The translations under genes were made by a program, and so were the position numbers. Positions 3,431 to 62,428 of a stretch of DNA of 64,000 bases are shown here, in pieces (the stretch's first letter is position 1; each line of letters begins with the position of its first letter). The notes beneath the pieces were generated by a model. That model made no database searches and was not told the DNA's origin. It saw only the letters and a program-made list of their open reading frames with translations. Location: IMG/VR virus record IMGVR_UViG_3300023202_000383, positions 186,001 through 250,000 of that record, one strand, 5' to 3'.

Positions 3431-4460
3431 TAAATTTGAATATCTAAAGGGTATAGTCGAAATAATTACCAAGGACCGTCATGGTAATATTATTAACGTA
3501 GACACATATCCTAACATAATCAAAATATTCGCCAAAGATATGCTCGCCCACAGAATCATATATTCTAAGCTGTGGGACACTGGCACCGATGGTGGTAGCT
3601 GGGTAGACCACAATATAGACCCAGATGAAGAATTTGCTATTAAGTATATCCTTCTTGGGGCATCCTTCGACGACGATGGAAACCCGCTAGGCCAAGCTGA
3701 CACAAGATATTATCTGTCTGACCCAGTTACTGGCGGATTTATCGCCAAGGTCCCAGAGATCGGCGCAGATAACATGGGCGATCTCATAAACCCAATTCCG
3801 ATATCTGCGCCAGACAGGCCGCTCAAGAAGGTAGAAAATGTGCTGTTTGAACCTTCATATCAACCAGCCGATTCCCCGCTGCTTGATGAGAATGTTCGTG
3901 CTATAAACAATACTGTGGTGCTAGAAACAACGATACGTACCGATGAGTACAACGGATTTGGTAGCACATCGTCAGATTTCTTTACAATAACTGAGATAGC
4001 GTTGGCTGGCGGCAAAACGCTAGAAGATCCTCTAACTGGCTGTGAATGTGTGCCAAGAATTTTATTCTTAGAGGGCGCTGGTGGCGACAGAGACGTGTCA
4101 ATAGATGCAACAGCCAACAGCTCGGCTACGATAACTATTGATGCTGGTGTACCGGCATCCGATGTCAATAGGATCAACGAAGGCGACCAGATCTTGATAG
4201 TTGGTCGAGCGACAACCGAAGAAACATATGATACTATTGACCAGGTAAATCCATATTACTTGGTGGTTCAAAAATGCCCTGGTGGTAGAGAATTTGTTCT
4301 AGATAGAACCCCCACCGATTCTACTGGCACTGCTTTGAGCGGCGAGATTGGGGTATATAGAAGCACCTTGAGATTGTTCAGCCAGCGCATATTGTCAACG
4401 CCATTTAAGAAAACAGATAGCTTTGAAGTCACAATTCGATGGCGCATTATAATGTCTTAA
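3402..4460 (+). CDS. Virion structural protein (baseplate/tail-fibre attachment type)
   Basis: KGIVEII N-terminus, ITEIAL and C-terminal LFSQRI..PFKKTDSFEVTIRWRII, typical of phage tail/baseplate proteins. Confidence 0.6.
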   Translation: MEQEIEMLSDKFEYLKGIVEIITKDRHGNIINVDTYPNIIKIFAKDMLAHRIIYSKLWDTGTDGGSWVDHNIDPDEEFAIKYILLGASFDDDGNPLGQADTRYYLSDPVTGGFIAKVPEIGADNMGDLINPIPISAPDRPLKKVENVLFEPSYQPADSPLLDENVRAINNTVVLETTIRTDEYNGFGSTSSDFFTITEIALAGGKTLEDPLTGCECVPRILFLEGAGGDRDVSIDATANSSATITIDAGVPASDVNRINEGDQILIVGRATTEETYDTIDQVNPYYLVVQKCPGGREFVLDRTPTDSTGTALSGEIGVYRSTLRLFSQRILSTPFKKTDSFEVTIRWRIIMS

Positions 4461-4501
4461 TCGGCTATAAGAAAAAACATTCCACAAATCAAACATATTA
4501 T

Positions 4502-5992
4502 ATGGCTAGAATAGATTGGTCAAAGTATGATCAGGCTATAGTCGACTATATGCCTAATTATTGTGCAAAAGAGTTTAGAAATCTATATGCCCCAGATATA
4601 TCCTATAGTGCTATTTGCAATAGGGCGAAGTTTCTTGGTGTTAAACCAAAGAAATATAGAATTACTGAGAAGCACAAAAAAGCAACATCAAACGGTGCGA
4701 GAAAGAAGTTAAGTTCAGATCAATATGATTATATTTCAAAGAATCTTAATAAAATCCCAAGAACTGATATAGCAAAACACTTGGGGATATCATTGCATTT
4801 AGTTACTAGAGCGTCTAAAGATCTAGGAATCCAAATAGATACAAGGAAATGGAGAAAATTTAGTGCAGATAGGTCTAAAAAACATATTCATAAAGCCACG
4901 CAAGCTTCTGTCAATAAAATAATGAATATGTCAGAATCAGAAAAGGCCGAATATTCAAAGAAGAAATCCAATGATACAAAGAAATTATGGGAAGACCCAG
5001 AATACAGGCTAAAAGTCCGTAATGGAATAAAAGCTGCCTACAATAATACAGATTTGAGAGATAGACTAAGCACAATAGGCAAAGACAGATTTAAAAATGA
5101 TAAGAGCGTCAGAGATGCACTAATAAACAAAAGTTTTGAAACTAAGAATAGCAAATTAAACGATACAATATCTATAAAATTGGATAATTTAAATATAAAA
5201 CATGATAGAGAATTTGAAATAGGTAATTATTCGTTTGATTTTAGAGTTGGCAATATTCTATTAGAGGTTAATGGAAATTATTGGCATAATTTACCCGAAA
5301 ATATTAGAAATGATCGAGCGAAATCAACCTATATAGAAAAATATACAAATTACAAATTAAAGGTCTTGTGGGAAAATGAAGCAAAATCTGTAAGATGCAA
5401 TGATAGATTATTAGAACTGCTTGAAATAAAAAAGCCGGATCAAAAACAGATAAAATTAAATGAACTAACTATAGATTACGATGTTGATAAGCTTGAATCC
5501 AGAAAATTTCTTACTAGTTTTCATTATCTTGGCGACACAAGCAGGAAAAAATATGTCTTTGGGTTAAGACTGCATGGCGAGCTCGTTTCGGTAGTTGTAT
5601 TTGGTAATTTGATAAGGCAGAACATAGATAATAATTGTTTGGAATTGTCTAGAATGTGCAGGCATCCATACTTCTACAATAAAAATATGATGAGCTGGTT
5701 TCTGTCTAAATGCACAAAATATTTAAAATCGAATTACAATTACAGTGGCATTATAAGTTATGCTGACAAAAGGTACCATGATGGTGCTGTCTATAAAGCT
5801 AGTAATTGGGGCGACTGCGGGGACACCCAGCCAGACTATTGTTACATGACTGAGGATAATATTCCAATGCACAAGAAAACTCTATATAATAGAGCGGTGA
5901 AAAAGGGTATGAAAGAAAGAGAATATGCCGAACTTATGAACATGAAAAAGACAAAAATCGGTTCTAAACGCAAATTTAAGATTACATTTTGA
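4502..5992 (+). CDS. Hef-like free-standing endonuclease (HTH/NUMOD3-like repeats + Vsr/DUF559-like nuclease + GNAT/Mom-like C-domain)
   Basis: FDF..GNILLEVNGNYWH nuclease motif; FLTSFHYLG...ELSRMC...IISYAD..YHDGAVYKASNW C-domain; AT-rich; start placed at ATG 4502 (track 4439). Confidence 0.7.
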   Translation: MARIDWSKYDQAIVDYMPNYCAKEFRNLYAPDISYSAICNRAKFLGVKPKKYRITEKHKKATSNGARKKLSSDQYDYISKNLNKIPRTDIAKHLGISLHLVTRASKDLGIQIDTRKWRKFSADRSKKHIHKATQASVNKIMNMSESEKAEYSKKKSNDTKKLWEDPEYRLKVRNGIKAAYNNTDLRDRLSTIGKDRFKNDKSVRDALINKSFETKNSKLNDTISIKLDNLNIKHDREFEIGNYSFDFRVGNILLEVNGNYWHNLPENIRNDRAKSTYIEKYTNYKLKVLWENEAKSVRCNDRLLELLEIKKPDQKQIKLNELTIDYDVDKLESRKFLTSFHYLGDTSRKKYVFGLRLHGELVSVVVFGNLIRQNIDNNCLELSRMCRHPYFYNKNMMSWFLSKCTKYLKSNYNYSGIISYADKRYHDGAVYKASNWGDCGDTQPDYCYMTEDNIPMHKKTLYNRAVKKGMKEREYAELMNMKKTKIGSKRKFKITF

Positions 5993-10366: not shown

Positions 10367-10450
10367 TGCACGGAGAGGGACTTGAACCCCCAAGCCCTTT
10401 CGGGATCCGAGTTACAGTCGGAGATGCTACCAATTACGCTCTATCCGTGC
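10367..10450 (-). tRNA. tRNA-Tyr(GTA)
   Basis: Cloverleaf, anticodon loop CTGTAAC, long variable arm, TTCAAGT T-loop; no encoded CCA. Confidence 0.92.
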
Positions 10451-10469: not shown

Positions 10470-11099
10470 ATGGAATTAAGACATCCTTTAAAGAATGATA
10501 TATGGGCTCTGGAACTATTCGACTTTATGGAGGGCGGCTTCTTTGTAGAAGCTGGTTGTACCAATGGAAAAAGCGGTTCTGCTACGTGGAATCTCGAAAA
10601 AGAATATGGATGGAATGGCCTGTGTGTGGAGCCAAACCACGTGATGTATGGGAAAATGATCAATGCTGGATGGAGATCATGTCATACAGCCAATGTTTGT
10701 TTATATGATAAGGAAGGTGAAATAACTTTTGCCGAATACCATGATGGCTCTGATGTATTCAGGAGCCATATTATAAATAACTGCAATGACAAAAATTTGC
10801 CAAAACCAGACAAGATATCAGTGAGACGATGCGTTTCGTTAACATCTCTATTGGATGAAATATCGGCACCAAAGATTATTCACTACTGCTGCTTAGATGT
10901 TGAAGGAGCCGAGTATAAGGTACTCAAAGGCATAGATTTCAATAAGTATAAGATATTGTCTATGTCTGTAGAAGTTAGTAAGAATTTCACTACTAAATGT
11001 GCTAAATTAATGCTTAAAAATGGGTATATTAGATCAACTAATAAATATACTGACAAACCATTTGAACAGTATTGGATTCACAATAGCATAACGCCCTAG
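10470..11099 (+). CDS. FkbM-family methyltransferase
   Basis: FFVEAGCTNG, GWNGLCVEPN, LDVEGAE..VLKGIDF motifs. Confidence 0.85.
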   Translation: MELRHPLKNDIWALELFDFMEGGFFVEAGCTNGKSGSATWNLEKEYGWNGLCVEPNHVMYGKMINAGWRSCHTANVCLYDKEGEITFAEYHDGSDVFRSHIINNCNDKNLPKPDKISVRRCVSLTSLLDEISAPKIIHYCCLDVEGAEYKVLKGIDFNKYKILSMSVEVSKNFTTKCAKLMLKNGYIRSTNKYTDKPFEQYWIHNSITP

Positions 11100-11164
11100 A
11101 CGGGGATCGAACCCGCAGCCTTTCGCGTGACAAGCGAATGATCTTCCACTTGATCTTCTAGGGC
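11092..11164 (-). tRNA. tRNA-Asp(GTC)
   Basis: Stem GCCCTAG/CTAGGGC, anticodon loop TTGTCAC, TTCGATC T-loop. Confidence 0.9.
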
Positions 11165-12075: not shown

Positions 12076-12146
12076 TCCGCCCGGATGGAGTTGAACCAAC
12101 GTCGGACCGTTATCAGCGGTCTGCTCTACCGTTGAGCTACGGGCGG
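12076..12146 (-). tRNA. tRNA-Ile(GAT)
   Basis: Cloverleaf, anticodon loop CTGATAA. Confidence 0.9.
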
Positions 12147-12221: not shown

Positions 12222-12304
12222 CACGCCGGGTAGGATTCGAACCTACAGGCCCTTTGCGGGCACGGTTTTGGAGACCGCTTGGCTCACCAATGCACTGCCG
12301 ACGT
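12222..12304 (-). tRNA. Atypical class II tRNA with CCA (Trp) anticodon
   Basis: Acceptor ACGTCGG/CCGGCGT, G73, loop CTCCAAA, long V-arm GCCC-GCAAA-GGGC, T-arm GTAGG-TTCGAAT-CCTAC; non-canonical D-arm. Confidence 0.75.
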
Positions 12305-12318
12305 ATAAGAATGGGGAA

Positions 12319-12391
12319 TGGACCTGGAGGGATTCCAACCCTCGACCTCTTCCTTGCAAGGGAAGCGTTCTCGCTACTGAACTACAGGCCC
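12319..12391 (-). tRNA. tRNA-Ala(TGC)
   Basis: G3.U70 pair, loop CTTGCAA; T-loop variant TTGGAAT. Confidence 0.88.
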
Positions 12392-12424: not shown

Positions 12425-12496
12425 TGGAGCCATTGGGATTCGAACCCAAGATTCTACCATGCCATGGTAGCGTGATCCCTGTTTCACCATAGCCCC
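12425..12496 (-). tRNA. tRNA-Ala(GGC)
   Basis: G3.U70 pair, loop ATGGCAT, TTCGAAT T-loop. Confidence 0.88.
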
Positions 12497-16525: not shown

Positions 16526-16796
16526 CTCCCCTGCCTGGACTTGAACCAGGAACCTAGCGGTTACAGCTACCCGGAAATTTCTATCCGGACTGGACTTTCT
16601 CTTGGCCATGTCTTTCGATTTAGGCCCATCCCGTAAAGTCTCTACACTTGCCCGGCTTTCGCCTGCTAGCTCGGTCGGGATTACCATGCCATTATGGGTT
16701 AGGCTTCCCCGAATTAGGGATGTTTTCACCATGTAGTTTCCTACATGGGCTGCAATTGTTTACAGCCGCTCGCTCTACCAATTGAGCTACAGAGGA
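16526..16796 (-). tRNA. tRNA-Asn(GTT) interrupted by a group I intron
   Basis: 5' exon TCCTCTGTAGCTCAATTGGTAGAGCGAGCGGCTGT (16796-16762) plus 3' exon TAACCGCTAGGTTCCTGGTTCAAGTCCAGGCAGGGGAG (16563-16526) rebuild the loop CTGTTAA. Confidence 0.9.
16564..16761 (-). ncRNA. Group I self-splicing intron, 198 nt, no ORF
   Basis: 5' splice after U with IGS GCAGCC pairing to GGCTGT (G.U); P2 CCATGTAG-GAAA-CTACATGG; P3 CATCCC/GGGATG; P4 AATTCGGGGAA/TCCCGA; R TGTAGAGACT; S AAGAGAAAGTCC; P9 CCGGA/TCCGG; terminal G. Confidence 0.9.
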
Positions 16797-19225: not shown

Positions 19226-19311
19226 CAGCGGCTGTAGGATTCGAACCTACGTGGGGCTTGTAGCCCTGCAGCTTCAAAGGCTGCCGCGATCGTCCACTCC
19301 GCCAAGCCGCT
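19226..19311 (-). tRNA. Atypical class II tRNA with TTG (Gln) anticodon
   Basis: Acceptor AGCGGCT/AGCCGCT, G73, class II D-arm GCG-GAGTGGACGAT-CGC, loop CTTTGAA, V-arm GGGCT-ACA-AGCCC, T-arm GTAGG-TTCGAAT-CCTAC. Confidence 0.8.
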
Positions 19312-20690: not shown

Positions 20691-20692
20691 AA

Positions 20693-20764
20693 TGCTCCCA
20701 AGGGGAATCGAACCCCTATTTCCTGCGTGAAAAGCAGGTGTCCTAGCCGTTAGACGATGGGAGC
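20693..20764 (-). tRNA. tRNA-Glu(TTC)
   Basis: Cloverleaf, loop TTTTCAC, TTCGATT T-loop. Confidence 0.9.
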
Positions 20765-20767
20765 ATA

Positions 20768-20906: not shown

Positions 20907-20978
20907 TGGGTCAGACCGGGATTGAACCAGTGTCTCACGGGCTTCAACCGTGCGCTCTACCAACTGAGCTACTGACCC
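20907..20978 (-). tRNA. tRNA-Phe(GAA)
   Basis: Cloverleaf, loop TTGAAGC. Confidence 0.9.
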
Positions 20979-21036: not shown

Positions 21037-21501
21037 TTAAACTCCTTCAAAAGCGTTCCGGCTGCTTAAGGTCCCAGTACGCTCCTTCATCGCTCGCGGA
21101 ACCTCTTCTCCAAGAAACTTCTCAAGCTCTTCGGGTGTATCGAACATGTGAGCGTTATTGGCTAACGTTACGCACATATTCTTTACGCTCTCGTCGTCTG
21201 CGTCTTCCCAAGAGTCGCATCCGCTGCATGATCCGTAGTAGTCAGTAAGGACTACAAGCTTGAAGAAGTCTGGTCCATACCAAACAGCATAAATATAGCC
21301 AACCATTCCCTGATAATCACCAGAGCAGTATTCGGCAATGACCATAGAATCCTTGAATAGGGATTCCATGATTTCAGTATGTCCGCCAGCATAACGCGGC
21401 TGAATCATGATCTTGTCCCAATCCAACATATCTTTCAACATCAAATCGGCCATCATGCGCCTCCCAATAAAACAACGACCTTGCCCGGATTTACCGAGCA
21501 A
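21037..21501 (-). CDS. Hypothetical phage protein
   Basis: SGDYQG...DYYGSCSGCDSWE conserved-looking motif; true start probably the later ATG. Confidence 0.7.
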   Translation of the reverse strand: MLGKSGQGRCFIGRRMMADLMLKDMLDWDKIMIQPRYAGGHTEIMESLFKDSMVIAEYCSGDYQGMVGYIYAVWYGPDFFKLVVLTDYYGSCSGCDSWEDADDESVKNMCVTLANNAHMFDTPEELEKFLGEEVPRAMKERTGTLSSRNAFEGV

Positions 21502-36014: not shown

Positions 36015-36331
36015 TGAAGAACGTCATGCAAGCCATGGCGGAAGAGCTAGTCCGTAGACTATGCTATTGCGAGCTGGTGCGCAAAAAGTGGCCCTCAAAC
36101 GGATTCCCACACTATAGATGGAATAGTGGTATTGGTGGAGAGCATGGTCTCATTGAGGTAATATATTCTGATTGTATATTGGCTGAATTTTGGCCAGACT
36201 GCTCCACAGTATGGTATCCGAAGTCCAAAGGATGGCATTATATTCTTGAGGACCCAAATTTCGAGCCAGAATTTCTGGTGTACGAAATGTATGCGTACTT
36301 GGTTGCACACTACCTACTAGGGTCTCGATGA
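36011..36331 (+). CDS. Hypothetical, family A paralogue
   Basis: YILEDPNFEPEFLVYEM. Confidence 0.65.
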   Translation: MMKNVMQAMAEELVRRLCYCELVRKKWPSNGFPHYRWNSGIGGEHGLIEVIYSDCILAEFWPDCSTVWYPKSKGWHYILEDPNFEPEFLVYEMYAYLVAHYLLGSR

Positions 36332-38415
36332 AGTTACCAGAAAACATAGAAGCTAGAGACTACCAGCTCCAGATCATATCCGAAACCATTGAAGCAATCG
36401 AGCGTGGGCATAAGTCTATTTTGATAGTCTCGCCAACTGGATCGGGCAAGACTATTACGGGGCACTTACTTCTGCATGAGCTTTACAATAGATATGGTTA
36501 CAATGCTGGGTGGACCTCAATGCGTAGGTTCCTTTGGCGTCAAGCACGTAGATCGAATGAAAAATTGACGAAGTTTCCGCATGTCCGATATTTTAGTCTA
36601 TTTGATAAAGACTTTCCAACCGACGTCGATGTGCGAGTGGAAGATGAGTGCCTTCCGGCACCCACTATAATAGAAACGGAAGATGGGCTAAAAACGATTA
36701 GAGAAATCGTTGATTCAAAATATTCTGGAAGAGTGCTTTCATTCAACGGAACAAACAATGAATGGTGTGAGGTTACTAATTGGTATAAAAGAGACAACGA
36801 TAAAACTTGGATTAATCCAACAAGAAACAACCCAAATAAATACACTGACACATTCAAGCAATTGTGGTGTACACCAGATCATACATTATTCTATATTGAT
36901 GATCCATTAAATCCTATCATAAAACAAATTGCAGCCAAAGACATTGCCGGAAAGTATCTTGTTGCAAAACCAACAAATTATAAACGAAACAACATAAATC
37001 CTTACTATAATAGTGATCAGTTATCGGTCATAATTGGATCTGTCTTGGGTGATGGCTCGGTTGGCAAGTCTGGCAGAGTAAGACTGCAGCATTGCAGTAT
37101 GCAATCTGAATATTTAGACTGGAAAGCCAAAATACTTGGTGGCAATAAATCAAGACATGATAAATGGTCTGGATATAGATGGAAGCACGACGGATTTAGA
37201 GACAATTTTGCCGTAACTAGCCAGACATCTAGAATAAGAGATATATGCTACATAAATAATCAAAAGAAAATCACAAACGACATAGTTGAAATGGCGGATA
37301 TAAAGACTGTTGCTATATGGTATATGGATGATGGGAGTATTAGTAGAAAACGTGCAGTGTTCCATACTGAAGGATTCGACAAAGAATCGGTAATAAACTG
37401 CCAGAAAATATTGGCAAAGTTCGACATAAATAGCAAAATAGCTAAGTCGAAAACAAAATACCATATTATACAATTAAATGTAGAAAATACTAAGAAAATG
37501 ATGGGATTAATATCAAAATACAGATGCTCATCTATGAATTATAAATTTACAGAACATCATGACTTATATAAATGGGACAGCAAAAAATTAGACTTCGGAA
37601 CAATCAAAATAAATCATATTAATAATAAACAAGGTAGGGCGATAAAAGGTAGGAAATTGAAGTATGACATAGAAGTCAAAAAGAATCATAACTTTTATGC
37701 CAATGGATATTTAGTACACAATTGCCACCATAGCGCATGCAATACGTCTATTTGGCAGCGCGAGACCATCGACCCGGCAATTGACATTGGTTTGACGGCT
37801 ACTAACTATCGTACTGACAAGCTGAAGTTGGCTTATAGTAAGGTTGTCAACGGCCCAGATATAGATTTTCTTGTGAATAACGGCTTCTTGAGTCCTTATC
37901 ACTTCTATGCGCTCAGGCAGAGATGGAATGCAGACAACATAGCACGCTTGTATTTGTCGGACGCTGCCAGGTGGGGCAAAAGTGTGATCTTCTTATCCAA
38001 GGTGGACAACTGCTATAAAGCAATGAATATTTTGTCCGATGCTGGAATAAAATGTGATGTTGTGCATGCTAATAGCGACCAAGAGAACCAGATCGAAGCG
38101 TTTATCAACAATGACTTGCAAGTTTTGCTGAACGTCTTTGTTCTTACAGAAGGTTTCGACGTACCAGACTTGAAGACCGTATTTGTTAGATCTGCATCAG
38201 AGGGGCCGACAATACAGATGTGTGGACGAGTGCTTCGTACTCATGGCAGCAAAAAATATGCGCAAATAGTCCAGCCGTATTCTGCCAAGCATCCTTTCAC
38301 CAATATAGCTGAGGCATCAAAGAAATTGGTGCAGAAGAGAGGCAATTGGGATGAAGTTTCTACGAATTCCTTAGTAGAGATAGCGTCTAAAGCTATATTT
38401 AGGAGAAGATGGTGA
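36328..38415 (+). CDS. SF2 helicase (Res/UvsW-like) containing an intein
   Basis: ARDYQ, SPTGSGKT, DE|CHH after splicing, GLTAT, VLTEGFDVP, QMCGRVLR; 337 aa after splicing. Confidence 0.88.
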   Translation: MKLPENIEARDYQLQIISETIEAIERGHKSILIVSPTGSGKTITGHLLLHELYNRYGYNAGWTSMRRFLWRQARRSNEKLTKFPHVRYFSLFDKDFPTDVDVRVEDECLPAPTIIETEDGLKTIREIVDSKYSGRVLSFNGTNNEWCEVTNWYKRDNDKTWINPTRNNPNKYTDTFKQLWCTPDHTLFYIDDPLNPIIKQIAAKDIAGKYLVAKPTNYKRNNINPYYNSDQLSVIIGSVLGDGSVGKSGRVRLQHCSMQSEYLDWKAKILGGNKSRHDKWSGYRWKHDGFRDNFAVTSQTSRIRDICYINNQKKITNDIVEMADIKTVAIWYMDDGSISRKRAVFHTEGFDKESVINCQKILAKFDINSKIAKSKTKYHIIQLNVENTKKMMGLISKYRCSSMNYKFTEHHDLYKWDSKKLDFGTIKINHINNKQGRAIKGRKLKYDIEVKKNHNFYANGYLVHNCHHSACNTSIWQRETIDPAIDIGLTATNYRTDKLKLAYSKVVNGPDIDFLVNNGFLSPYHFYALRQRWNADNIARLYLSDAARWGKSVIFLSKVDNCYKAMNILSDAGIKCDVVHANSDQENQIEAFINNDLQVLLNVFVLTEGFDVPDLKTVFVRSASEGPTIQMCGRVLRTHGSKKYAQIVQPYSAKHPFTNIAEASKKLVQKRGNWDEVSTNSLVEIASKAIFRRRW
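36649..37722 (+). mobile_element. Intein with LAGLIDADG homing endonuclease (358 aa)
   Basis: Starts CLPAPT, ends NFYANGYLVHN followed by Cys; IIGSVLGDGSV and AIWYMDDGSI motifs. Confidence 0.92.
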
Positions 38416-57520: not shown

Positions 57521-59023
57521 TTACCGCTCGTAGACAAATCTTAACTTCTTGCTACCCCATACCTTCACATAGCCATTTGTTTCAGCGTATTCACGCTCTT
57601 TCATTTTCATCTTCACAGCACGCTGATAGAGCGTTTTCTTATGCATTGTCCACCCATTCTCATCAGTATACCAATAACTTGGTGGTACATCTCCGTCGGG
57701 CTTGAAATTCAACGACTTATACACAGCACCATCATGATTAAAAGTGGTATCACAATACGATATTATTAACTTGTACTTATCTGGCAGTTTTTTTAGACAC
57801 CTGCTAACAAACCACGACGCGAAATTCTTCTTCTGATAGCGAGGGTGAATACATAACCTAGATAATTCGCGGCATTCTTTCTTCTTATATCTGCCAGTCC
57901 TAATATTGTGACGTACCAACGGTGAAAAAACGCAAACAGCAATCAACTCTTCTTCAAGATAGGCACCATAACAAATTCCGCCTCGACCAGCATCGGATAG
58001 GTAATGATATTTCGAAAGAAGAAGCCTGTATTCGCTAGCTGGACAGTCATTAATTTCTACATTATTGAAATCGTATTCGACAGTATTCAGTTTAGTAATT
58101 CCGAGCCAATATTTGAGCAATTCGACCACTTTATTATAATTGTGAAATTCATGCTCCCAAATGCATTTCAATTCGTACTGATTTGGGAAGTTATTTGCGA
58201 CGTATGATGCCTTCCGTTTATCATTAGCATGCCCTCGATCTGTAGAATGCCAGTATTCGCCTTGGCATTCTATAAGGAGATCTGGTGCGTTCTGCCTAGG
58301 GATGACGCAATCAAAGCTATATGGCCCGATTTTGGTCTGTAAATCGTCTTGTTTGCTATTGTGCTCTCTGTAATAAGAAATATTTAAGTCGTCTAGGATA
58401 GAATAGAGTGTTTCTTGTATAGATGAGACCTTTGGCATATTATCTCTAGCTAGAGACAAGGACTCGCAGATTTTGGCTCTATATTCGGGATTCTCCCATG
58501 ACTTTTTAGTTGCTTCTGATATCTTACGCCTATATTCTTGATTCCCCCACGCCTCTTTGGATACCTGCCCCAAAATTTCTGTCATTTTGTCTCTGTATTT
58601 CCCATCCAACCACCTCTTTTTGCCGAGTTCTGACATCTTTTGTTTAAATTCTGGGGTAACTTTCTTGCGGTTAATCTCTGTCATTCTTTCAGCGAAATCG
58701 TCACTCTGCCTAAAAGCACTCATCCTGTCTCGTAATTCAGGATCATTCCAAATTTCTTTGCTATTGGTTACAATTTTGTTTCTATACCTATCATCCTTCC
58801 ATGCTTCTTTTGCTCCTTTCCTAGATGCTTTTCTTTTCTCTGGATCGTTTGCTACACACTTGGCGCATTCCCATGGTATTTGATTTCTTATAACCTCGGA
58901 TTTCTTGCGAATGGATTTTGTGCCCTCGCTGCCGCAATTATCACATTCAACGACTACCTTTGGCCTATGTCCAGATAGATCTATTCTATTAAATTTTTCT
59001 AGCGTCTTATTCCAATTTATCAT
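57521..59023 (-). CDS. Hef-like endonuclease (NUMOD3-like repeats + Vsr/DUF559-like + GNAT/Mom-like)
   Basis: YSFDC...LLIECQGEYWH; YHYL..AGRGG...ELSRLCIHPRYQKKNFASWFV...IISYCD..FNHDGAVYK. Confidence 0.75.
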   Translation of the reverse strand: MINWNKTLEKFNRIDLSGHRPKVVVECDNCGSEGTKSIRKKSEVIRNQIPWECAKCVANDPEKRKASRKGAKEAWKDDRYRNKIVTNSKEIWNDPELRDRMSAFRQSDDFAERMTEINRKKVTPEFKQKMSELGKKRWLDGKYRDKMTEILGQVSKEAWGNQEYRRKISEATKKSWENPEYRAKICESLSLARDNMPKVSSIQETLYSILDDLNISYYREHNSKQDDLQTKIGPYSFDCVIPRQNAPDLLIECQGEYWHSTDRGHANDKRKASYVANNFPNQYELKCIWEHEFHNYNKVVELLKYWLGITKLNTVEYDFNNVEINDCPASEYRLLLSKYHYLSDAGRGGICYGAYLEEELIAVCVFSPLVRHNIRTGRYKKKECRELSRLCIHPRYQKKNFASWFVSRCLKKLPDKYKLIISYCDTTFNHDGAVYKSLNFKPDGDVPPSYWYTDENGWTMHKKTLYQRAVKMKMKEREYAETNGYVKVWGSKKLRFVYER

Positions 59024-60910: not shown

Positions 60911-62428
60911 ATGATCGATTGGGAAGCAAGCAAAGCTGAGTTCGGAACCACCATGGGTCTAAAAGGCAATAGACCCATGGTGGTTGTTTTATGTGACAAG
61001 TGCAAGTCTAAAGGATCTATTCGGATTCGCAACAAATCTCTGATCAAAAAGACTGGCGACCGCACATGGCTGTGTAGATCATGCGTGAATAACCAACCTA
61101 ACAAGATAGCAAAACTTAAGAATGCTTCTAAAAAATTATGGGAAAATGATAAGTATAGATCAAAAAATTTAAGCTCAGTCAGAAGTGCAGAAAATCGCAA
61201 AAAGCTTAGCGACAATTGGTATAAAAATATGAAATCAATTGTCGCCAGTGACGAATATAAATCAAAGCAAAGAAAATCATCAATCAAATCATGGCGTGAT
61301 AGTAAGTATGCAAGCAAGATTATCAAGTCATCAACAGAGATGTGGAATAATGCTTCTTTACGTGACAAGATGTTGTCATCTAGAAGAACTGATAAATATA
61401 GAGAGAATCAGCGTATAAAGGCAATAGAACGGTGGCAAGACCCTAATTATATAAAGAAGCAGGACTCTGCAAAAGCTAGAGCGGTTAGATCACCAGAGAA
61501 CTTGGCGAAATTGCGAGCCAACCAGAAAAAAGTGTCATCAATACAAAATATGTTGTATTCAATCCTCGATGATTTAGAAGTTAAATATTATAGAGAATAC
61601 AATGATAAAATAGATGATCACGAGGTCAAGATTGGTCCATATAACTTCGACTGTTTGGTGCCACGTGACAACAAGCCAGACTTGCTAATAGAATGTCAGG
61701 GCGAATACTGGCATTCTATTAGAGAAGGCAGCGATAAAGCTAAAGCATCATATATATCAAACAACCACAGCGATAAGTATGAGCTTAAATATATATGGGA
61801 GCATGAATTTCATAATAAGAATAGAGTTGTTGAGCTTGTTAAATATTGGTTAGGCATTGCCGCGATTGACTCAATAGAATTCGATTTTGATTCAGTTGAG
61901 ATAAGAAAATGTCCACCAAAAGATTATAAACTTTTGCTTGGCAAATATCATTATCTTCCAACAGCAGGTCGCGGTGGCATCGCTTTTGGTGCATATTTGG
62001 AGTCCGGGTTAATAGCTGTATGTATTTTTTCTCCGATGCCTCGGCAAAACATGCCATATAATAATAAATCGCATAGAGAATTGTCTAGGTTATGTATTCA
62101 CCCTCGCTACCAGAAGAAGAATTTTGCGTCGTGGTTTGTGTCGCGGTGTATCAAATTGCTACCGACAAAATACAAAACAATAATATCATATTGTGATACT
62201 ACATTCAACCATGATGGGGCGGTCTATAAAGCATGCAATTTCAAATTGGATGGTGAAGTTAAGCCAGATTATTGGTATGCTAGCAAAAGCGGCTGGATTA
62301 TGCATAAAAGAACAATGTATGGGCATGCAACAAAGATGAAGAAAAATGAATCCGATTATGCCAAAGAGATGGGCTACAAGAAAATATGGGGCAGCAAGAA
62401 ATTAAGATTTGTTTTTGACAGATCATGA
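60911..62428 (+). CDS. Hef-like endonuclease, close paralogue of 57521..59023
   Basis: Same domain order; YNFDC...LLIECQGEYWH; ELSRLCIHPRYQKKNFASWFV identical. Confidence 0.75.
   Translation: MIDWEASKAEFGTTMGLKGNRPMVVVLCDKCKSKGSIRIRNKSLIKKTGDRTWLCRSCVNNQPNKIAKLKNASKKLWENDKYRSKNLSSVRSAENRKKLSDNWYKNMKSIVASDEYKSKQRKSSIKSWRDSKYASKIIKSSTEMWNNASLRDKMLSSRRTDKYRENQRIKAIERWQDPNYIKKQDSAKARAVRSPENLAKLRANQKKVSSIQNMLYSILDDLEVKYYREYNDKIDDHEVKIGPYNFDCLVPRDNKPDLLIECQGEYWHSIREGSDKAKASYISNNHSDKYELKYIWEHEFHNKNRVVELVKYWLGIAAIDSIEFDFDSVEIRKCPPKDYKLLLGKYHYLPTAGRGGIAFGAYLESGLIAVCIFSPMPRQNMPYNNKSHRELSRLCIHPRYQKKNFASWFVSRCIKLLPTKYKTIISYCDTTFNHDGAVYKACNFKLDGEVKPDYWYASKSGWIMHKRTMYGHATKMKKNESDYAKEMGYKKIWGSKKLRFVFDRS

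What the first reader, a model, noticed from the sequence alone, without database searches (positions are those of the whole stretch)
19226..19311. Second class II tRNA, with a Gln TTG anticodon, sharing an identical T-arm with the CCA tRNA
Seen: textbook class II body (D-arm GCG-GAGTGGACGAT-CGC, 5-bp V-stem GGGCT/AGCCC, G73) with loop CTTTGAA, i.e. anticodon TTG. Its 17-nt T-arm GTAGGTTCGAATCCTAC is identical to that of the 12222 tRNA, 7 kb away. Known: Gln tRNAs are class I. Inference: the phage keeps a lineage of anticodon-swapped class II tRNAs. Two independent cases argue for a system (altered decoding or evasion of tRNA-cleaving defences) rather than decay. The V-arm geometry (1 unpaired 5', 3 unpaired 3') looks like this window's tRNA-Tyr.
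Basis: partly seen in the sequence, partly recalled or inferred. Interest (0 to 1): 0.8.

Follow-up and report, generated by a model that had tools for sequence, protein, structure and literature searches.

The report
Phage glutamine tRNA with extra arm
A giant phage carries a well-formed glutamine-anticodon tRNA with the long extra arm normally found only in Leu, Ser and Tyr tRNAs; it is one of many such long-armed phage tRNAs, and the phage's genes show no sign of an altered genetic code.

Summary
Window 19226-19311 (minus strand) is an 86-nt tRNA with a 7/5 acceptor/T structure, anticodon UUG, G73 and a 17-nt variable region with a 5-bp stem (ARAGORN; Rfam 57.9 bits). Its 17-nt T arm equals that of the CCA tRNA at 12222-12304.

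That T arm is the commonest one in phage tRNAs, and the two tRNAs are otherwise at background similarity, so no shared lineage is shown.

Long-armed tRNA-Gln(UUG) and tRNA-Trp(CCA) genes are abundant in viral contigs: at least 41 and about 70 distinct sequences from truncated scans. They are rare in cellular genomes. As groups they keep the acceptor-end signatures of ordinary Gln and Trp tRNAs. Some sit beside a class I twin with the same acceptor stem.

The window's Gln tRNA is a mosaic. Its D arm and core look Ser-like. Its acceptor top (A1-U72, C3-G70) and V-arm geometry do not.

CAA and TGG codons lie at conserved Gln and Trp positions, and the standard code fits.

Most likely this is a working Gln tRNA on a class II scaffold. 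Charging is untested. A role for the arm in evading tRNA-targeting nucleases is plausible but unshown. I found no published description.

The parts
19226..19311 (-). tRNA with anticodon UUG (Gln), class II shape, 86 nt, no encoded CCA
   Evidence: ARAGORN; Rfam RF00005 57.9 bits; own parse with 7/7 acceptor pairs
19305..19311 (-). Acceptor stem 5' strand AGCGGCT (A1, G2, C3)
   Evidence: A1-U72 with C3-G70 occurs in 0 of 93 phage tRNA-Ser; C3-G70 is the modal 3-70 pair of class I phage tRNA-Gln
19286..19302 (-). D arm (G10, C11-G24, G13.U22), Ser-like / class II-like
   Evidence: (0.85 identity to a Ser D arm)
19273..19279 (-). Anticodon loop CUUUGAA; anticodon U34 U35 G36 at 19277-19275
19251..19267 (-). 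Variable region, 17 nt: 1 unpaired base, 5-bp stem GGGCU/AGCCC with loop ACA, 3 unpaired bases
   Evidence: Exactly 3 unpaired 3' bases occurs in 0 of 77 confident Ser hairpins; 17 of 24 class II Gln have 2 or 3
19234..19250 (-). T arm GTAGGTTCGAATCCTAC, identical to that of the CCA tRNA
   Evidence: commonest T arm in the phage tRNA pool
19226..19233 (-). Acceptor stem 3' strand AGCCGCT and discriminator G73 (19226); followed by TT
12222..12304 (-). tRNA-Trp(CCA), class II shape, 83 nt; A1-U72, G73, C8, short D stem; lies 14 nt downstream of tRNA-Ala(UGC)
   Evidence: ARAGORN; Rfam 37.3 bits in sensitive mode; body classifies as Trp; flanks
10367..10450 (-). tRNA-Tyr(GUA), naturally class II; V arm 0.73 identical to that of the CCA tRNA
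   Evidence: ARAGORN; Rfam 26.9 bits, below the gathering score
20693..20978 (-). Neighbouring ordinary tRNA-Glu(UUC) and tRNA-Phe(GAA), same strand, same TT 3' flank

Best explanation
The element is a functional tRNA gene of a roughly 332 kb uncultured phage. It decodes CAA (and perhaps CAG) as glutamine, but it is built on a class II scaffold with a hairpin-bearing variable region.

Shown here:
- It is a well-formed 7/5 tRNA.
- It shares this phage's own 3'-flank signature with the seven ordinary tRNAs.
- It belongs to a large, mostly phage-borne population of long-armed tRNAs whose anticodons are not Leu, Ser or Tyr.
- As groups, these keep the acceptor-end identity marks of their anticodon's amino acid.
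- The phage's genes use CAA where homologues have Gln.

Inferred:
- Charging is by GlnRS, or by non-discriminating GluRS followed by GatCAB. The anticodon U35 G36, A37, G73, G10, G2-C71, C3-G70 and a weak 1-72 pair would direct this.
- SerRS is kept off by the loss of G1-C72 and A3-U70 and by a non-Ser orientation of the arm. G73 keeps off LeuRS and TyrRS.
- A long arm should be tolerated because these class I enzymes bind with the variable region facing the solvent (my recollection of published work, not checked here).

Most speculative: the extra arm makes the phage tRNA structurally unlike the host's tRNA-Gln. It could then escape tRNA-targeting nucleases, or be told apart from host tRNA, while still supplying Gln decoding.
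For: Real tRNA:
- ARAGORN and Rfam at 57.9 bits; perfect acceptor and T stems.
- Identical in five independent assemblies.
- All nine window tRNAs have TT straight after N73, against 14 of 1392 pooled phage tRNAs.

Population:
- 49 ARAGORN tRNA-Gln(UUG) genes with a 13-21 nt variable region (41 distinct) among the first 120 viral pattern hits, against 5 of 120 in cellular genomes, two of those identical to viral contigs.
- 106 of 120 hits for the CCA pattern are class II Trp.
- 17 of 20 sampled genes pass Rfam's gathering score.

Identity kept at group level:
- Gln II has U1-A72 in 28 of 44, like Gln I (52 of 66).
- Trp II has G73 in 72 of 78.
- Pro II has C1-G72 and A73 in 12 of 12. His II has C73 in 11 of 11.
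- Bodies classify mostly as their own isotype.
- Tandem class I / class II Gln(UUG) pairs share acceptor stems or D arms, as expected for a hairpin inserted into a class I tRNA-Gln.

This tRNA:
- A1-U72 with C3-G70 occurs in 0 of 93 Ser tRNAs.
- Its V geometry occurs in 0 of 77 confident Ser hairpins but is typical of class II Gln.
- Its Gln-profile score of 22.1 lies inside the genuine Gln range of 14-37.

Published rules (PMC9976931):
- An amber tRNA-Ser was switched from Ser to Gln charging by substituting two acceptor-helix base pairs, which established the importance of 1-72 and 3-70 for Gln identity.
- G1-C72 is conserved in bacterial tRNA-Ser.

Decoding: at 17 CAA sites, Q is the leading residue, 3 sites are Q-dominant (one column 97% Q) and none is S-, Y- or L-dominant. 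The standard code fits.

Precedent for evasion through the variable loop: PMC13096335.
Against: - No aminoacylation or expression data. No RNA run was listed.
- The body, scored without anticodon and V region, scores best as Ser (33.3, within the genuine Ser range), and the D arm is Ser-like.
- It has A1-U72, not the U1-A72 that GatCAB and GluRS2 are reported to read. Only 5 of 66 class I phage Gln tRNAs start with A.
- It is a singleton. No close relative was found in the viral, metagenome or phage collections. Conservation and compensatory change of this particular gene could therefore not be tested.
- The codon test shows what the genome expects, not what the tRNA delivers.
- The host is unknown, so it is unknown which Gln pathway applies.
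- The evasion role is pure inference.
Confidence: 0.55

Rival explanations
1. It is an anticodon-shifted tRNA-Ser (allo-tRNA-like in function). SerRS, which ignores the anticodon, charges it through the long arm and G73, so it inserts Ser at CAA codons. That would give deliberate or tolerated mistranslation, or a toxic tRNA aimed at the host.
For: - Best profile score is Ser, 33.3 against a genuine Ser median of 34.9. The D arm is 0.85 identical to a Ser D arm, with G9, C11-G24 and G13.
- It has a 5-bp V stem, G2-C71 and G73.
- Ser identity rests mainly on the variable arm (PMC9976931).
- Ser-charged allo-tRNAs with non-Ser anticodons exist in bacteria and their phages (PMC5389517).
- Caulobacter phage CcrBL9 has a Ser-like class II 'tRNA-Lys'.
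Against: - It lacks G1-C72 (85 of 88 Ser tRNAs have G1) and A3-U70. The window's 1-72 / 3-70 combination occurs in 0 of 93 Ser tRNAs.
- Three unpaired bases 3' of the V stem occur in 0 of 77 confident Ser hairpins.
- The review links pairs 1-72 and 3-70 to a Ser-to-Gln switch in a class II body.
- The phage itself uses CAA (294 codons in the window) at conserved Gln sites.
- The wider class II Gln family is clearly Gln-type.
Confidence: 0.15
2. It is not mainly a translation adaptor. It could be a decoy that soaks up a tRNA-targeting nuclease, or an aminoacyl donor or cofactor for a phage enzyme such as the Mom-family modules encoded in the window.
For: - 17 of 40 loci keep a class I and a class II Gln(UUG) side by side, hinting at separate roles.
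- The window has three Mom-family ORFs, and Mom uses Gly-tRNA-Gly as co-substrate (PMC13219725).
- A decoy or supplement role has been proposed for phage tRNA-Tyr (PMC13096335).
Against: - No linkage between the tRNA and the Mom-family genes was shown.
- Mom's known donor is Gly-tRNA, and the window has no tRNA-Gly.
- The anticodon loop is fully canonical (U33, A37), and no other Gln tRNA was found in the 73 kb examined.
- CAA is the phage's preferred Gln codon, which fits ordinary supply.
Confidence: 0.1
3. It is a decaying or chimeric tRNA gene, a recombination product of class II and Gln tRNAs, with no function.
For: - Mosaic character: Ser-like core with a non-Ser acceptor.
- Singleton with no close relatives.
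- The companion CCA tRNA has C8 and a weak D stem.
- The phage is full of homing endonucleases, which promote recombination.
Against: - All stems pair perfectly, and U8, U33, A37 and the T loop are canonical. The Rfam score of 57.9 bits is like that of the ordinary tRNAs beside it.
- It keeps the genome-specific TT 3' flank.
- It is invariant across five assemblies.
- It is the only Gln tRNA found in the phage's tRNA cluster.
Confidence: 0.08
4. The altered body lets the UUG (and CCA) anticodons also read stop codons (UAA/UAG, UGA) by near-cognate pairing. The two tRNAs would then be relatives of the Gln and Trp suppressors of recoded phages.
For: - Gln and Trp are the amino acids used in known phage stop-codon recoding (PMC10879173 abstract for UAG to Gln; the Trp case is from my own knowledge).
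- Body mutations can change decoding, as in the Hirsh suppressor of tRNA-Trp (my own knowledge, not checked here).
Against: - All three stops are used as terminators (TGA 33, TAA 26, TAG 25), with 90% coding under the standard code.
- No in-frame stops were needed for the long ORFs.
Confidence: 0.03

Closest known systems
Canonical bacterial class II tRNAs (Leu, Ser, Tyr)
   Same: A 7/5 acceptor/T structure, a long variable region forming a hairpin, an enlarged D loop and a Ser-like D arm.
   Different: The anticodon is UUG. The acceptor top (A1-U72, C3-G70) fits none of the three in the phage pool. G73 excludes Leu and Tyr. The V-arm layout is unlike Ser.
Ordinary bacterial and phage tRNA-Gln (class I)
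   Same: Anticodon loop CUUUGAA, G10, G2-C71, C3-G70 (the modal pair in phage Gln), a weak 1-72 pair, and G73 (17 of 66 phage Gln).
   Different: A 17-nt variable region instead of 4-5 nt. A1-U72 instead of U1-A72. The D arm is of class II type (C11-G24, G13) instead of U11-A24, U13.
Allo-tRNAs (Mukai et al. 2017, PMC5389517)
   Same: Long variable arm combined with anticodons outside Leu/Ser/Tyr; found in bacteria and phages; raises the question of Ser charging.
   Different: Allo-tRNAs have an 8/4 or 9/3 acceptor/T composition and carry Ser (or Ala) identity. This tRNA is 7/5 and lacks the Ser acceptor marks.
Amber tRNA-Ser converted to Gln identity by acceptor-helix changes (cited in PMC9976931)
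   Same: A class II body chargeable by GlnRS once acceptor-helix pairs are changed, which established the importance of 1-72 and 3-70. The window tRNA differs from the tRNA-Ser consensus at exactly those two pairs.
   Different: That was an engineered E. coli suppressor with a CUA anticodon. This is a natural phage gene with a sense anticodon, and the pairs are A-U and C-G. As I recall, the engineered pairs were U-A and G-C; I did not check this.
Phage tRNAs that evade tRNA-targeting defences (T5 tRNA-Tyr against retron-Eco7 PtuAB; anticodon-loop variants in mycobacteriophages)
   Same: A phage-encoded tRNA that differs structurally from the host's isoacceptor. In T5 tRNA-Tyr the difference is in the variable loop (PMC13096335; PMC10264068 abstract).
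   Different: Those cases change the sequence of an existing loop. Here a whole extra arm is present in an isotype that normally has none, and no defence system or resistance has been linked to it.
Nematode nev-tRNAs (from my own knowledge, not checked here)
   Same: Class II bodies carrying anticodons of class I amino acids.
   Different: Eukaryotic, reported to be charged with Leu, and rarely used in translation. Here the acceptor identity follows the anticodon.

Membership tests
tRNA (Rfam RF00005) | Cloverleaf scoring above the curated gathering score of 29 bits | tested here: met
   57.9 bits, full-length model match; also ARAGORN
Class II (long variable arm) tRNA | Variable region of 10 or more nt forming a stem-loop | tested here: met
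   17 nt, 5-bp stem, 3-nt loop
Bacterial tRNA-Ser | G1-C72 and G2-C71 conserved (PMC9976931) | tested here: not met
   A1-U72. G2-C71 is present. G1 occurs in 85 of 88 phage Ser tRNAs
Bacterial tRNA-Ser | [quoted passage not shown] | tested here: not met
   The 5-bp stem is within the Ser range, but 3 unpaired bases on the 3' side occur in 0 of 77 confident phage Ser hairpins, of which 71 have 0 or 1. This is a sequence proxy for orientation only
Bacterial tRNA-Ser | Charged by SerRS | not testable with these tools
   Needs an aminoacylation assay
Bacterial tRNA-Gln | Anticodon with U35 and G36, plus A37 | tested here: met
   Loop CUUUGAA
Bacterial tRNA-Gln | U1-A72 first pair, read by GatCAB and GluRS2 and important for GlnRS (PMC9976931) | tested here: inconclusive
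   A1-U72 is a weak pair but reversed. A1 occurs in 5 of 66 class I and 5 of 43 class II phage Gln tRNAs
Bacterial tRNA-Gln | Short (4-5 nt) variable loop | tested here: not met
   17 nt. But at least 41 distinct phage tRNA-Gln(UUG) sequences share this departure
Bacterial tRNA-Gln | Charged with Gln, directly or through Glu | not testable with these tools
   Indirect only: CAA sits at conserved Gln sites
Allo-tRNA (Mukai 2017) | 8/4 or 9/3 acceptor/T-stem composition | tested here: not met
   7-bp acceptor stem stacked on a 5-bp T stem
tRNA-Sec | Anticodon UCA, 8/5 structure and a 6-bp D stem in bacteria (from my own knowledge) | tested here: not met
   Anticodon UUG, 7/5 structure, 3-4 bp D stem with a 9-nt loop
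Phage long-armed tRNA-Gln(UUG) group (defined here) | UUG anticodon loop, 13-21 nt hairpin-forming variable region, canonical T loop, on a viral contig | tested here: met
   Matches the search pattern and the parse. V layout (1,3) is the second commonest in the group
Phage long-armed tRNA-Gln(UUG) group (defined here) | Body of Gln type (U1-A72, Gln-like D arm) | tested here: not met
   A1-U72 and a Ser-like D arm; it classifies as Ser where 24 group members classify as Gln. It is an atypical member

The most novel reading that the evidence does not exclude
Phages recurrently graft a variable-arm hairpin onto otherwise ordinary tRNAs (Gln, Trp, Pro, Lys, His, Asn, Cys, Thr, Glu, Met) while keeping their aminoacylation identity. 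They sometimes keep the class I and class II versions side by side. The extra arm would be a shape disguise. It would let the phage copy escape tRNA-targeting host nucleases, or be spared by the phage's own attack on host tRNA. That would make it a general and so far undescribed counter-defence layer in phage tRNA sets, and the window's Gln and Trp tRNAs would be two instances of it.
Probability: 0.3. Interest if true: 0.85.

Novelty: new variant of a known kind. Interest (0 to 1): 0.6.

Why it matters
Textbooks restrict the long variable arm in bacteria to Leu, Ser, Tyr and Sec tRNAs and treat it as an identity mark. Two things follow from this work.

First, the apparent anomaly in this window is not evidence for recoding. 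That prevents a wrong annotation of an altered genetic code.

Second, phage genomes hold many tRNAs of other specificities that carry such an arm and still keep their own acceptor identity. Ten full-text searches found no description of this. If the pattern holds up, it gives a natural test set for two questions: how class I synthetases, SerRS, EF-Tu, the ribosome and tRNA-targeting defence nucleases deal with an added arm, and why phages encode tRNAs at all. It would also offer ready-made orthogonal-looking scaffolds for tRNA engineering.

Tried and rejected
- **Close relatives of this tRNA.** I searched with megablast and blastn against 50,697 phage records, an exact anticodon-arm 17-mer, a subtype pattern in viral and metagenome contigs and the neighbouring protein. 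All returned only the window's own contig (L004, L353 and L406 are the same contig), so conservation and covariation of this particular gene could not be tested.
- **Natural variation.** Three DNA runs and a second JGI sample are 100% identical over the tRNAs.
- **Expression.** No RNA run was listed.
- **Host inference.** There is no close cultured relative. A glycosyltransferase has cyanobacterial best-named homologues, which I judged too weak to use.
- **A 1-nt register shift from a tRNA-Ser(UGA) loop.** The two metagenomic Ser tRNAs that share the D-loop motif have unrelated anticodon stems, so no inference is possible.
- **tRNA-Sec or allo-tRNA reading.** Rejected because the structure is 7/5 and the D arm is ordinary.
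- **Intron in the variable region.** Rejected as far too short for a group I intron, and the region forms a hairpin like those of class II tRNAs (my own reasoning).
- **Stop-codon recoding.** Rejected.
- **A 'class II tRNA' mention in the Mom paper.** It referred to synthetase classes, not to tRNA shape.
- **A missed tRNA at about 16550-16790.** Neither ARAGORN nor Rfam supports one.
- **Absolute frequencies of class II versus class I forms.** These could not be obtained because collection scans stop at 120 rows.

Full report
**1. What is there**

The finding's coordinates are exact, and the gene lies on the minus strand. ARAGORN calls tRNA-Gln(ttg). Rfam's tRNA model matches 19311-19226 end to end at 57.9 bits, similar to the ordinary tRNAs nearby.

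Read 5' to 3', it has these parts:
- a 7-bp acceptor stem, AGCGGCT/AGCCGCT
- U8 G9
- a D arm with G10, C11-G24 and G13.U22
- a 5-bp anticodon stem
- the loop CUUUGAA (anticodon UUG)
- a 17-nt variable region: one unpaired base, a 5-bp stem GGGCU/AGCCC with a 3-nt loop, then three unpaired bases
- a canonical T arm
- G73, with no encoded CCA

The 17-nt T arm is identical to that of the CCA tRNA at 12222-12304(-). ARAGORN calls that tRNA, and Rfam scores it at 37.3 bits, above the gathering score, once its filters are relaxed.

The window is part of a viral contig: 256.5 kb in IMG/VR and 332 kb in the JGI assembly. It carries many homing endonucleases, an intein-split helicase and mostly unknown genes. 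No close relative exists among 50,697 deposited phages. Identical sequence is present in two JGI samples and three sequencing runs.

**2. It is not a one-off**

Of those hits, 49 were ARAGORN tRNA-Gln(UUG) genes, 41 of them distinct, with variable regions of 13-21 nt.

The same pattern in one genome per prokaryotic species gave only 5 such genes in 120 hits. Two of those are identical to viral contigs.

The analogous CCA pattern gave 106 class II tRNA-Trp genes in 120 viral hits, about 70 of them distinct.

Seventeen of twenty sampled genes pass Rfam's tRNA threshold at 41-57 bits. Their variable regions form hairpins far more often than shuffled controls. For Gln, 59% have a stem of 4 bp or more, against 22% shuffled. 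For Trp it is 45% against 13%.

In the same loci, 9-11% of the other tRNAs that are not Leu, Ser or Tyr are also long-armed (Asn, Cys, Glu, His, Ile, Lys, Met, Pro, Thr and others). The figure is 1 of 31 in near-random viral loci. In cellular loci there are none outside two loci that themselves carry a class II tRNA-Gln.

Cultured phages carry examples annotated without comment, such as an 87-nt tRNA-Lys(CUU) in Caulobacter phage CcrBL9.

**3. Whose identity do they carry?**

I parsed 1457 distinct tRNAs from these loci. The long-armed variants keep the first base pair and discriminator of their anticodon's isotype.

| Group | First pair / discriminator |
|---|---|
| Gln, class II | U1-A72 in 28 of 44 (class I: 52 of 66) |
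| Trp, class II | G73 in 72 of 78; A1-U72 or G1.U72 in 61 of 78 |
| Pro, class II | C1-G72 and A73 in 12 of 12 |
| His, class II | C73 in 11 of 11 |
| Cys, class II | U73 in 6 of 7 |
| Ser (genuine) | G1-C72 in 83 of 93 |
| Leu (genuine class II) | A73 in 88 of 88 |
| Tyr (genuine) | A73 in 36 of 37 |

A profile classifier that ignores the anticodon and the variable region has 76% leave-one-out accuracy. It assigns most class II Gln, Trp, His, Cys, Pro and Glu bodies to their own isotype.

Seventeen of 40 loci with a class II Gln(UUG) also hold a class I Gln(UUG). These are often adjacent and have the same acceptor stem (L085, L095). In L276 the D arms are also identical, and the variable regions differ only by a 15-nt insert. 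For much of the Gln family, then, the class II form is a normal tRNA-Gln with a hairpin added.

The picture is not uniform. Class II Trp bodies are often nearest to Ser or Tyr bodies (45 of 78), and the CcrBL9 'tRNA-Lys' looks Ser-like. Anticodon shifts on class II scaffolds probably also occur.

**4. The window's two tRNAs**

The CCA tRNA classifies as Trp (38.5 against 27.6 for the runner-up). It carries A1-U72, G73 and CCA, which the identity review gives as the bacterial Trp set. It sits in a tRNA cluster 14 nt after tRNA-Ala(UGC). It has oddities: C8 and a very short D stem.

The UUG tRNA is a mosaic:
- **Ser-like core.** Without anticodon and arm, it scores best on the Ser profile. Its 33.3 compares with a genuine Ser median of 34.9. 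This is driven by G9, C11-G24, G13 and the anticodon stem. Its D arm is 0.85 identical to a Ser D arm.
- **Non-Ser acceptor top.** A1-U72 with C3-G70 occurs in 0 of 93 Ser tRNAs. C3-G70 is the commonest 3-70 pair of class I phage tRNA-Gln.
- **Non-Ser arm layout.** Three unpaired bases 3' of the V stem occur in 0 of 77 confident Ser hairpins. Among class II Gln, 17 of 24 have two or three.
- **Within the Gln range.** Its Gln-profile score of 22.1 is inside the genuine Gln range of 14-37.

The review records three relevant points (PMC9976931). An amber tRNA-Ser was switched from Ser to Gln charging by substituting two acceptor base pairs, which established the importance of 1-72 and 3-70 for Gln identity. 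G1-C72 is conserved in bacterial tRNA-Ser. G73 blocks LeuRS and TyrRS. The window tRNA departs from the Ser consensus at exactly those two pairs.

The two window tRNAs are not close kin. Outside the T arm they are 0.44 identical, against a background median of 0.41. The shared T arm is simply the commonest in the pool.

**5. Decoding**

The standard code gives 84 genes and 90% coding, with all three stop codons used as terminators. CAA is the slightly preferred Gln codon, 294 against 246 CAG.

I aligned two window proteins with 119 homologues each.

| Codon | Sites | Leading residue in homologue columns | Sites with one residue at 60% or more |
|---|---|---|---|
| CAA | 17 | Q (0.28) | 3, all Q (one column is 97% Q); none S, Y or L |
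| TGG | 31 | W (0.70) | 26: W 23, F 2, Y 1 |

The genome is written for CAA = Gln and TGG = Trp.

All nine window tRNAs, including both class II ones, are followed by TT right after the discriminator. Only 14 of 1392 pooled phage tRNAs have this. That argues the two are maintained and processed like the other seven.

**6. Mechanism**

*Shown:* a well-formed tRNA gene kept in step with the phage's tRNA set; membership of a large phage-borne class of long-armed tRNAs that are not Leu, Ser or Tyr; normal codon meaning in the phage's genes.

*Inferred:* charging with Gln through the anticodon, G73, G10 and the acceptor pairs, with SerRS, LeuRS and TyrRS excluded as described above.

*Speculative:* the arm serves to make the phage tRNA unlike the host's. 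Precedents exist. T5 tRNA-Tyr resists retron-Eco7 PtuAB through a distinctive variable loop (PMC13096335). Phage tRNAs escape anticodon nucleases through loop changes (PMC10264068, as cited).

No RNA data were available. No relative of this particular gene was found. Charging and function therefore remain untested. I put the Ser-charging rival at about 0.15.

**7. Comparison and novelty**

The tRNA is not an allo-tRNA, because it is 7/5 and not 8/4 or 9/3 (PMC5389517). It is not tRNA-Sec. It fails defining features of tRNA-Ser. It meets the anticodon features of tRNA-Gln but not the short variable loop or U1-A72.

Ten full-text searches found no description of 7/5 long-armed Gln or Trp tRNAs in phages. 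The library lacks most subscription journals, so an existing description cannot be ruled out.

I rate it a new variant of a known kind. The single gene is of moderate interest. The wider pattern it led to deserves a proper census and bench tests.

Noticed in passing
window 10367-10450, 11092-11164, 12076-12146, 12222-12304, 12319-12391, 12425-12496, 19226-19311, 20693-20764, 20907-20978 (all minus strand): All nine tRNAs lack an encoded CCA and are followed by TT immediately after the discriminator. Only 14 of 1392 pooled phage tRNAs show this, so it looks like a genome-specific 3'-processing signature.
   Followed up: partly
window 4439-5992 (+), 57521-59023 (-), 60911-62428 (+): Three paralogous ORFs of about 500 aa. 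Each has a C-terminal Mom-family module (PF25680) and N-terminal similarity to HNH/homing endonucleases. Mom was recently shown to use Gly-tRNA-Gly to modify adenine in DNA (PMC13219725).
   Followed up: partly
window 36328-38415 (+): SF2 helicase interrupted by an intein with a LAGLIDADG endonuclease (ResIII, Intein_splicing, LAGLIDADG_2 and Helicase_C hits).
   Followed up: no
window 10367-10450 (-): The tRNA-Tyr(GUA) scores only 26.9 bits in Rfam, below the gathering score. Its body does not classify as Tyr in the isotype profiles. Its V arm is 0.73 identical to that of the CCA tRNA.
   Followed up: partly
window 12222-12304 (-): The class II tRNA-Trp has C8 instead of the near-universal U8, and only about 2 canonical D-stem pairs. 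RNAfold prefers an alternative 4-bp D hairpin.
   Followed up: partly
window about 16550-16790: Contigs of other community members pile up here with tRNA-like loose ends, and one contig joins 16550 to 20954 (inside tRNA-Phe). Neither ARAGORN nor Rfam calls a tRNA here.
   Followed up: partly
window 20692-20765 compared with 19226-19311: Many foreign contigs at 80% likeness or more align to the phage tRNA-Glu, while none aligns to the class II tRNA-Gln. The former resembles cellular tRNAs of its community; the latter has no look-alike there.
   Followed up: no
L276 7027-7392; L085 338-586; L095 11063-11313; L082 2117-2407; L051 3360-3515: Class I and class II tRNA-Gln(UUG) genes occur in tandem, with identical acceptor stems or D arms. 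In L276 the long form equals the short form plus a 15-nt insert in the variable loop.
   Followed up: partly
L410 5996-6082 (Caulobacter phage CcrBL9, MH588546.1 81826-81912): The annotated 87-nt tRNA-Lys(CUU) has a class II body, G1-C72, U73 and a Ser-type D arm. It is a candidate anticodon-shifted Ser-type tRNA in a cultured jumbo phage.
   Followed up: partly
L119 3172-3629 and 6149-6232: The only other class II Gln(UUG) with A1-U72 and G73 has an acceptor strand (AGCGTCT) one base different from the window's. It lies on a viral contig that also carries a GOLLD RNA (201.8 bits) among tRNAs.
   Followed up: no
window 17816: A 21-nt insertion variant is present in contigs of runs X2 and X3, and there are small indels at 21066 and 21095 in all three runs relative to the window.
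   Followed up: no
L411 1-9321 (contig upstream of the window): The flank encodes adenosine deaminase, an Rrf2-like regulator and several large unknown proteins, with no further tRNAs. Inside the window there are DHFR, RNase T, sulfotransferase-like, pyruvyl-transferase and several GT2 genes.
   Followed up: no
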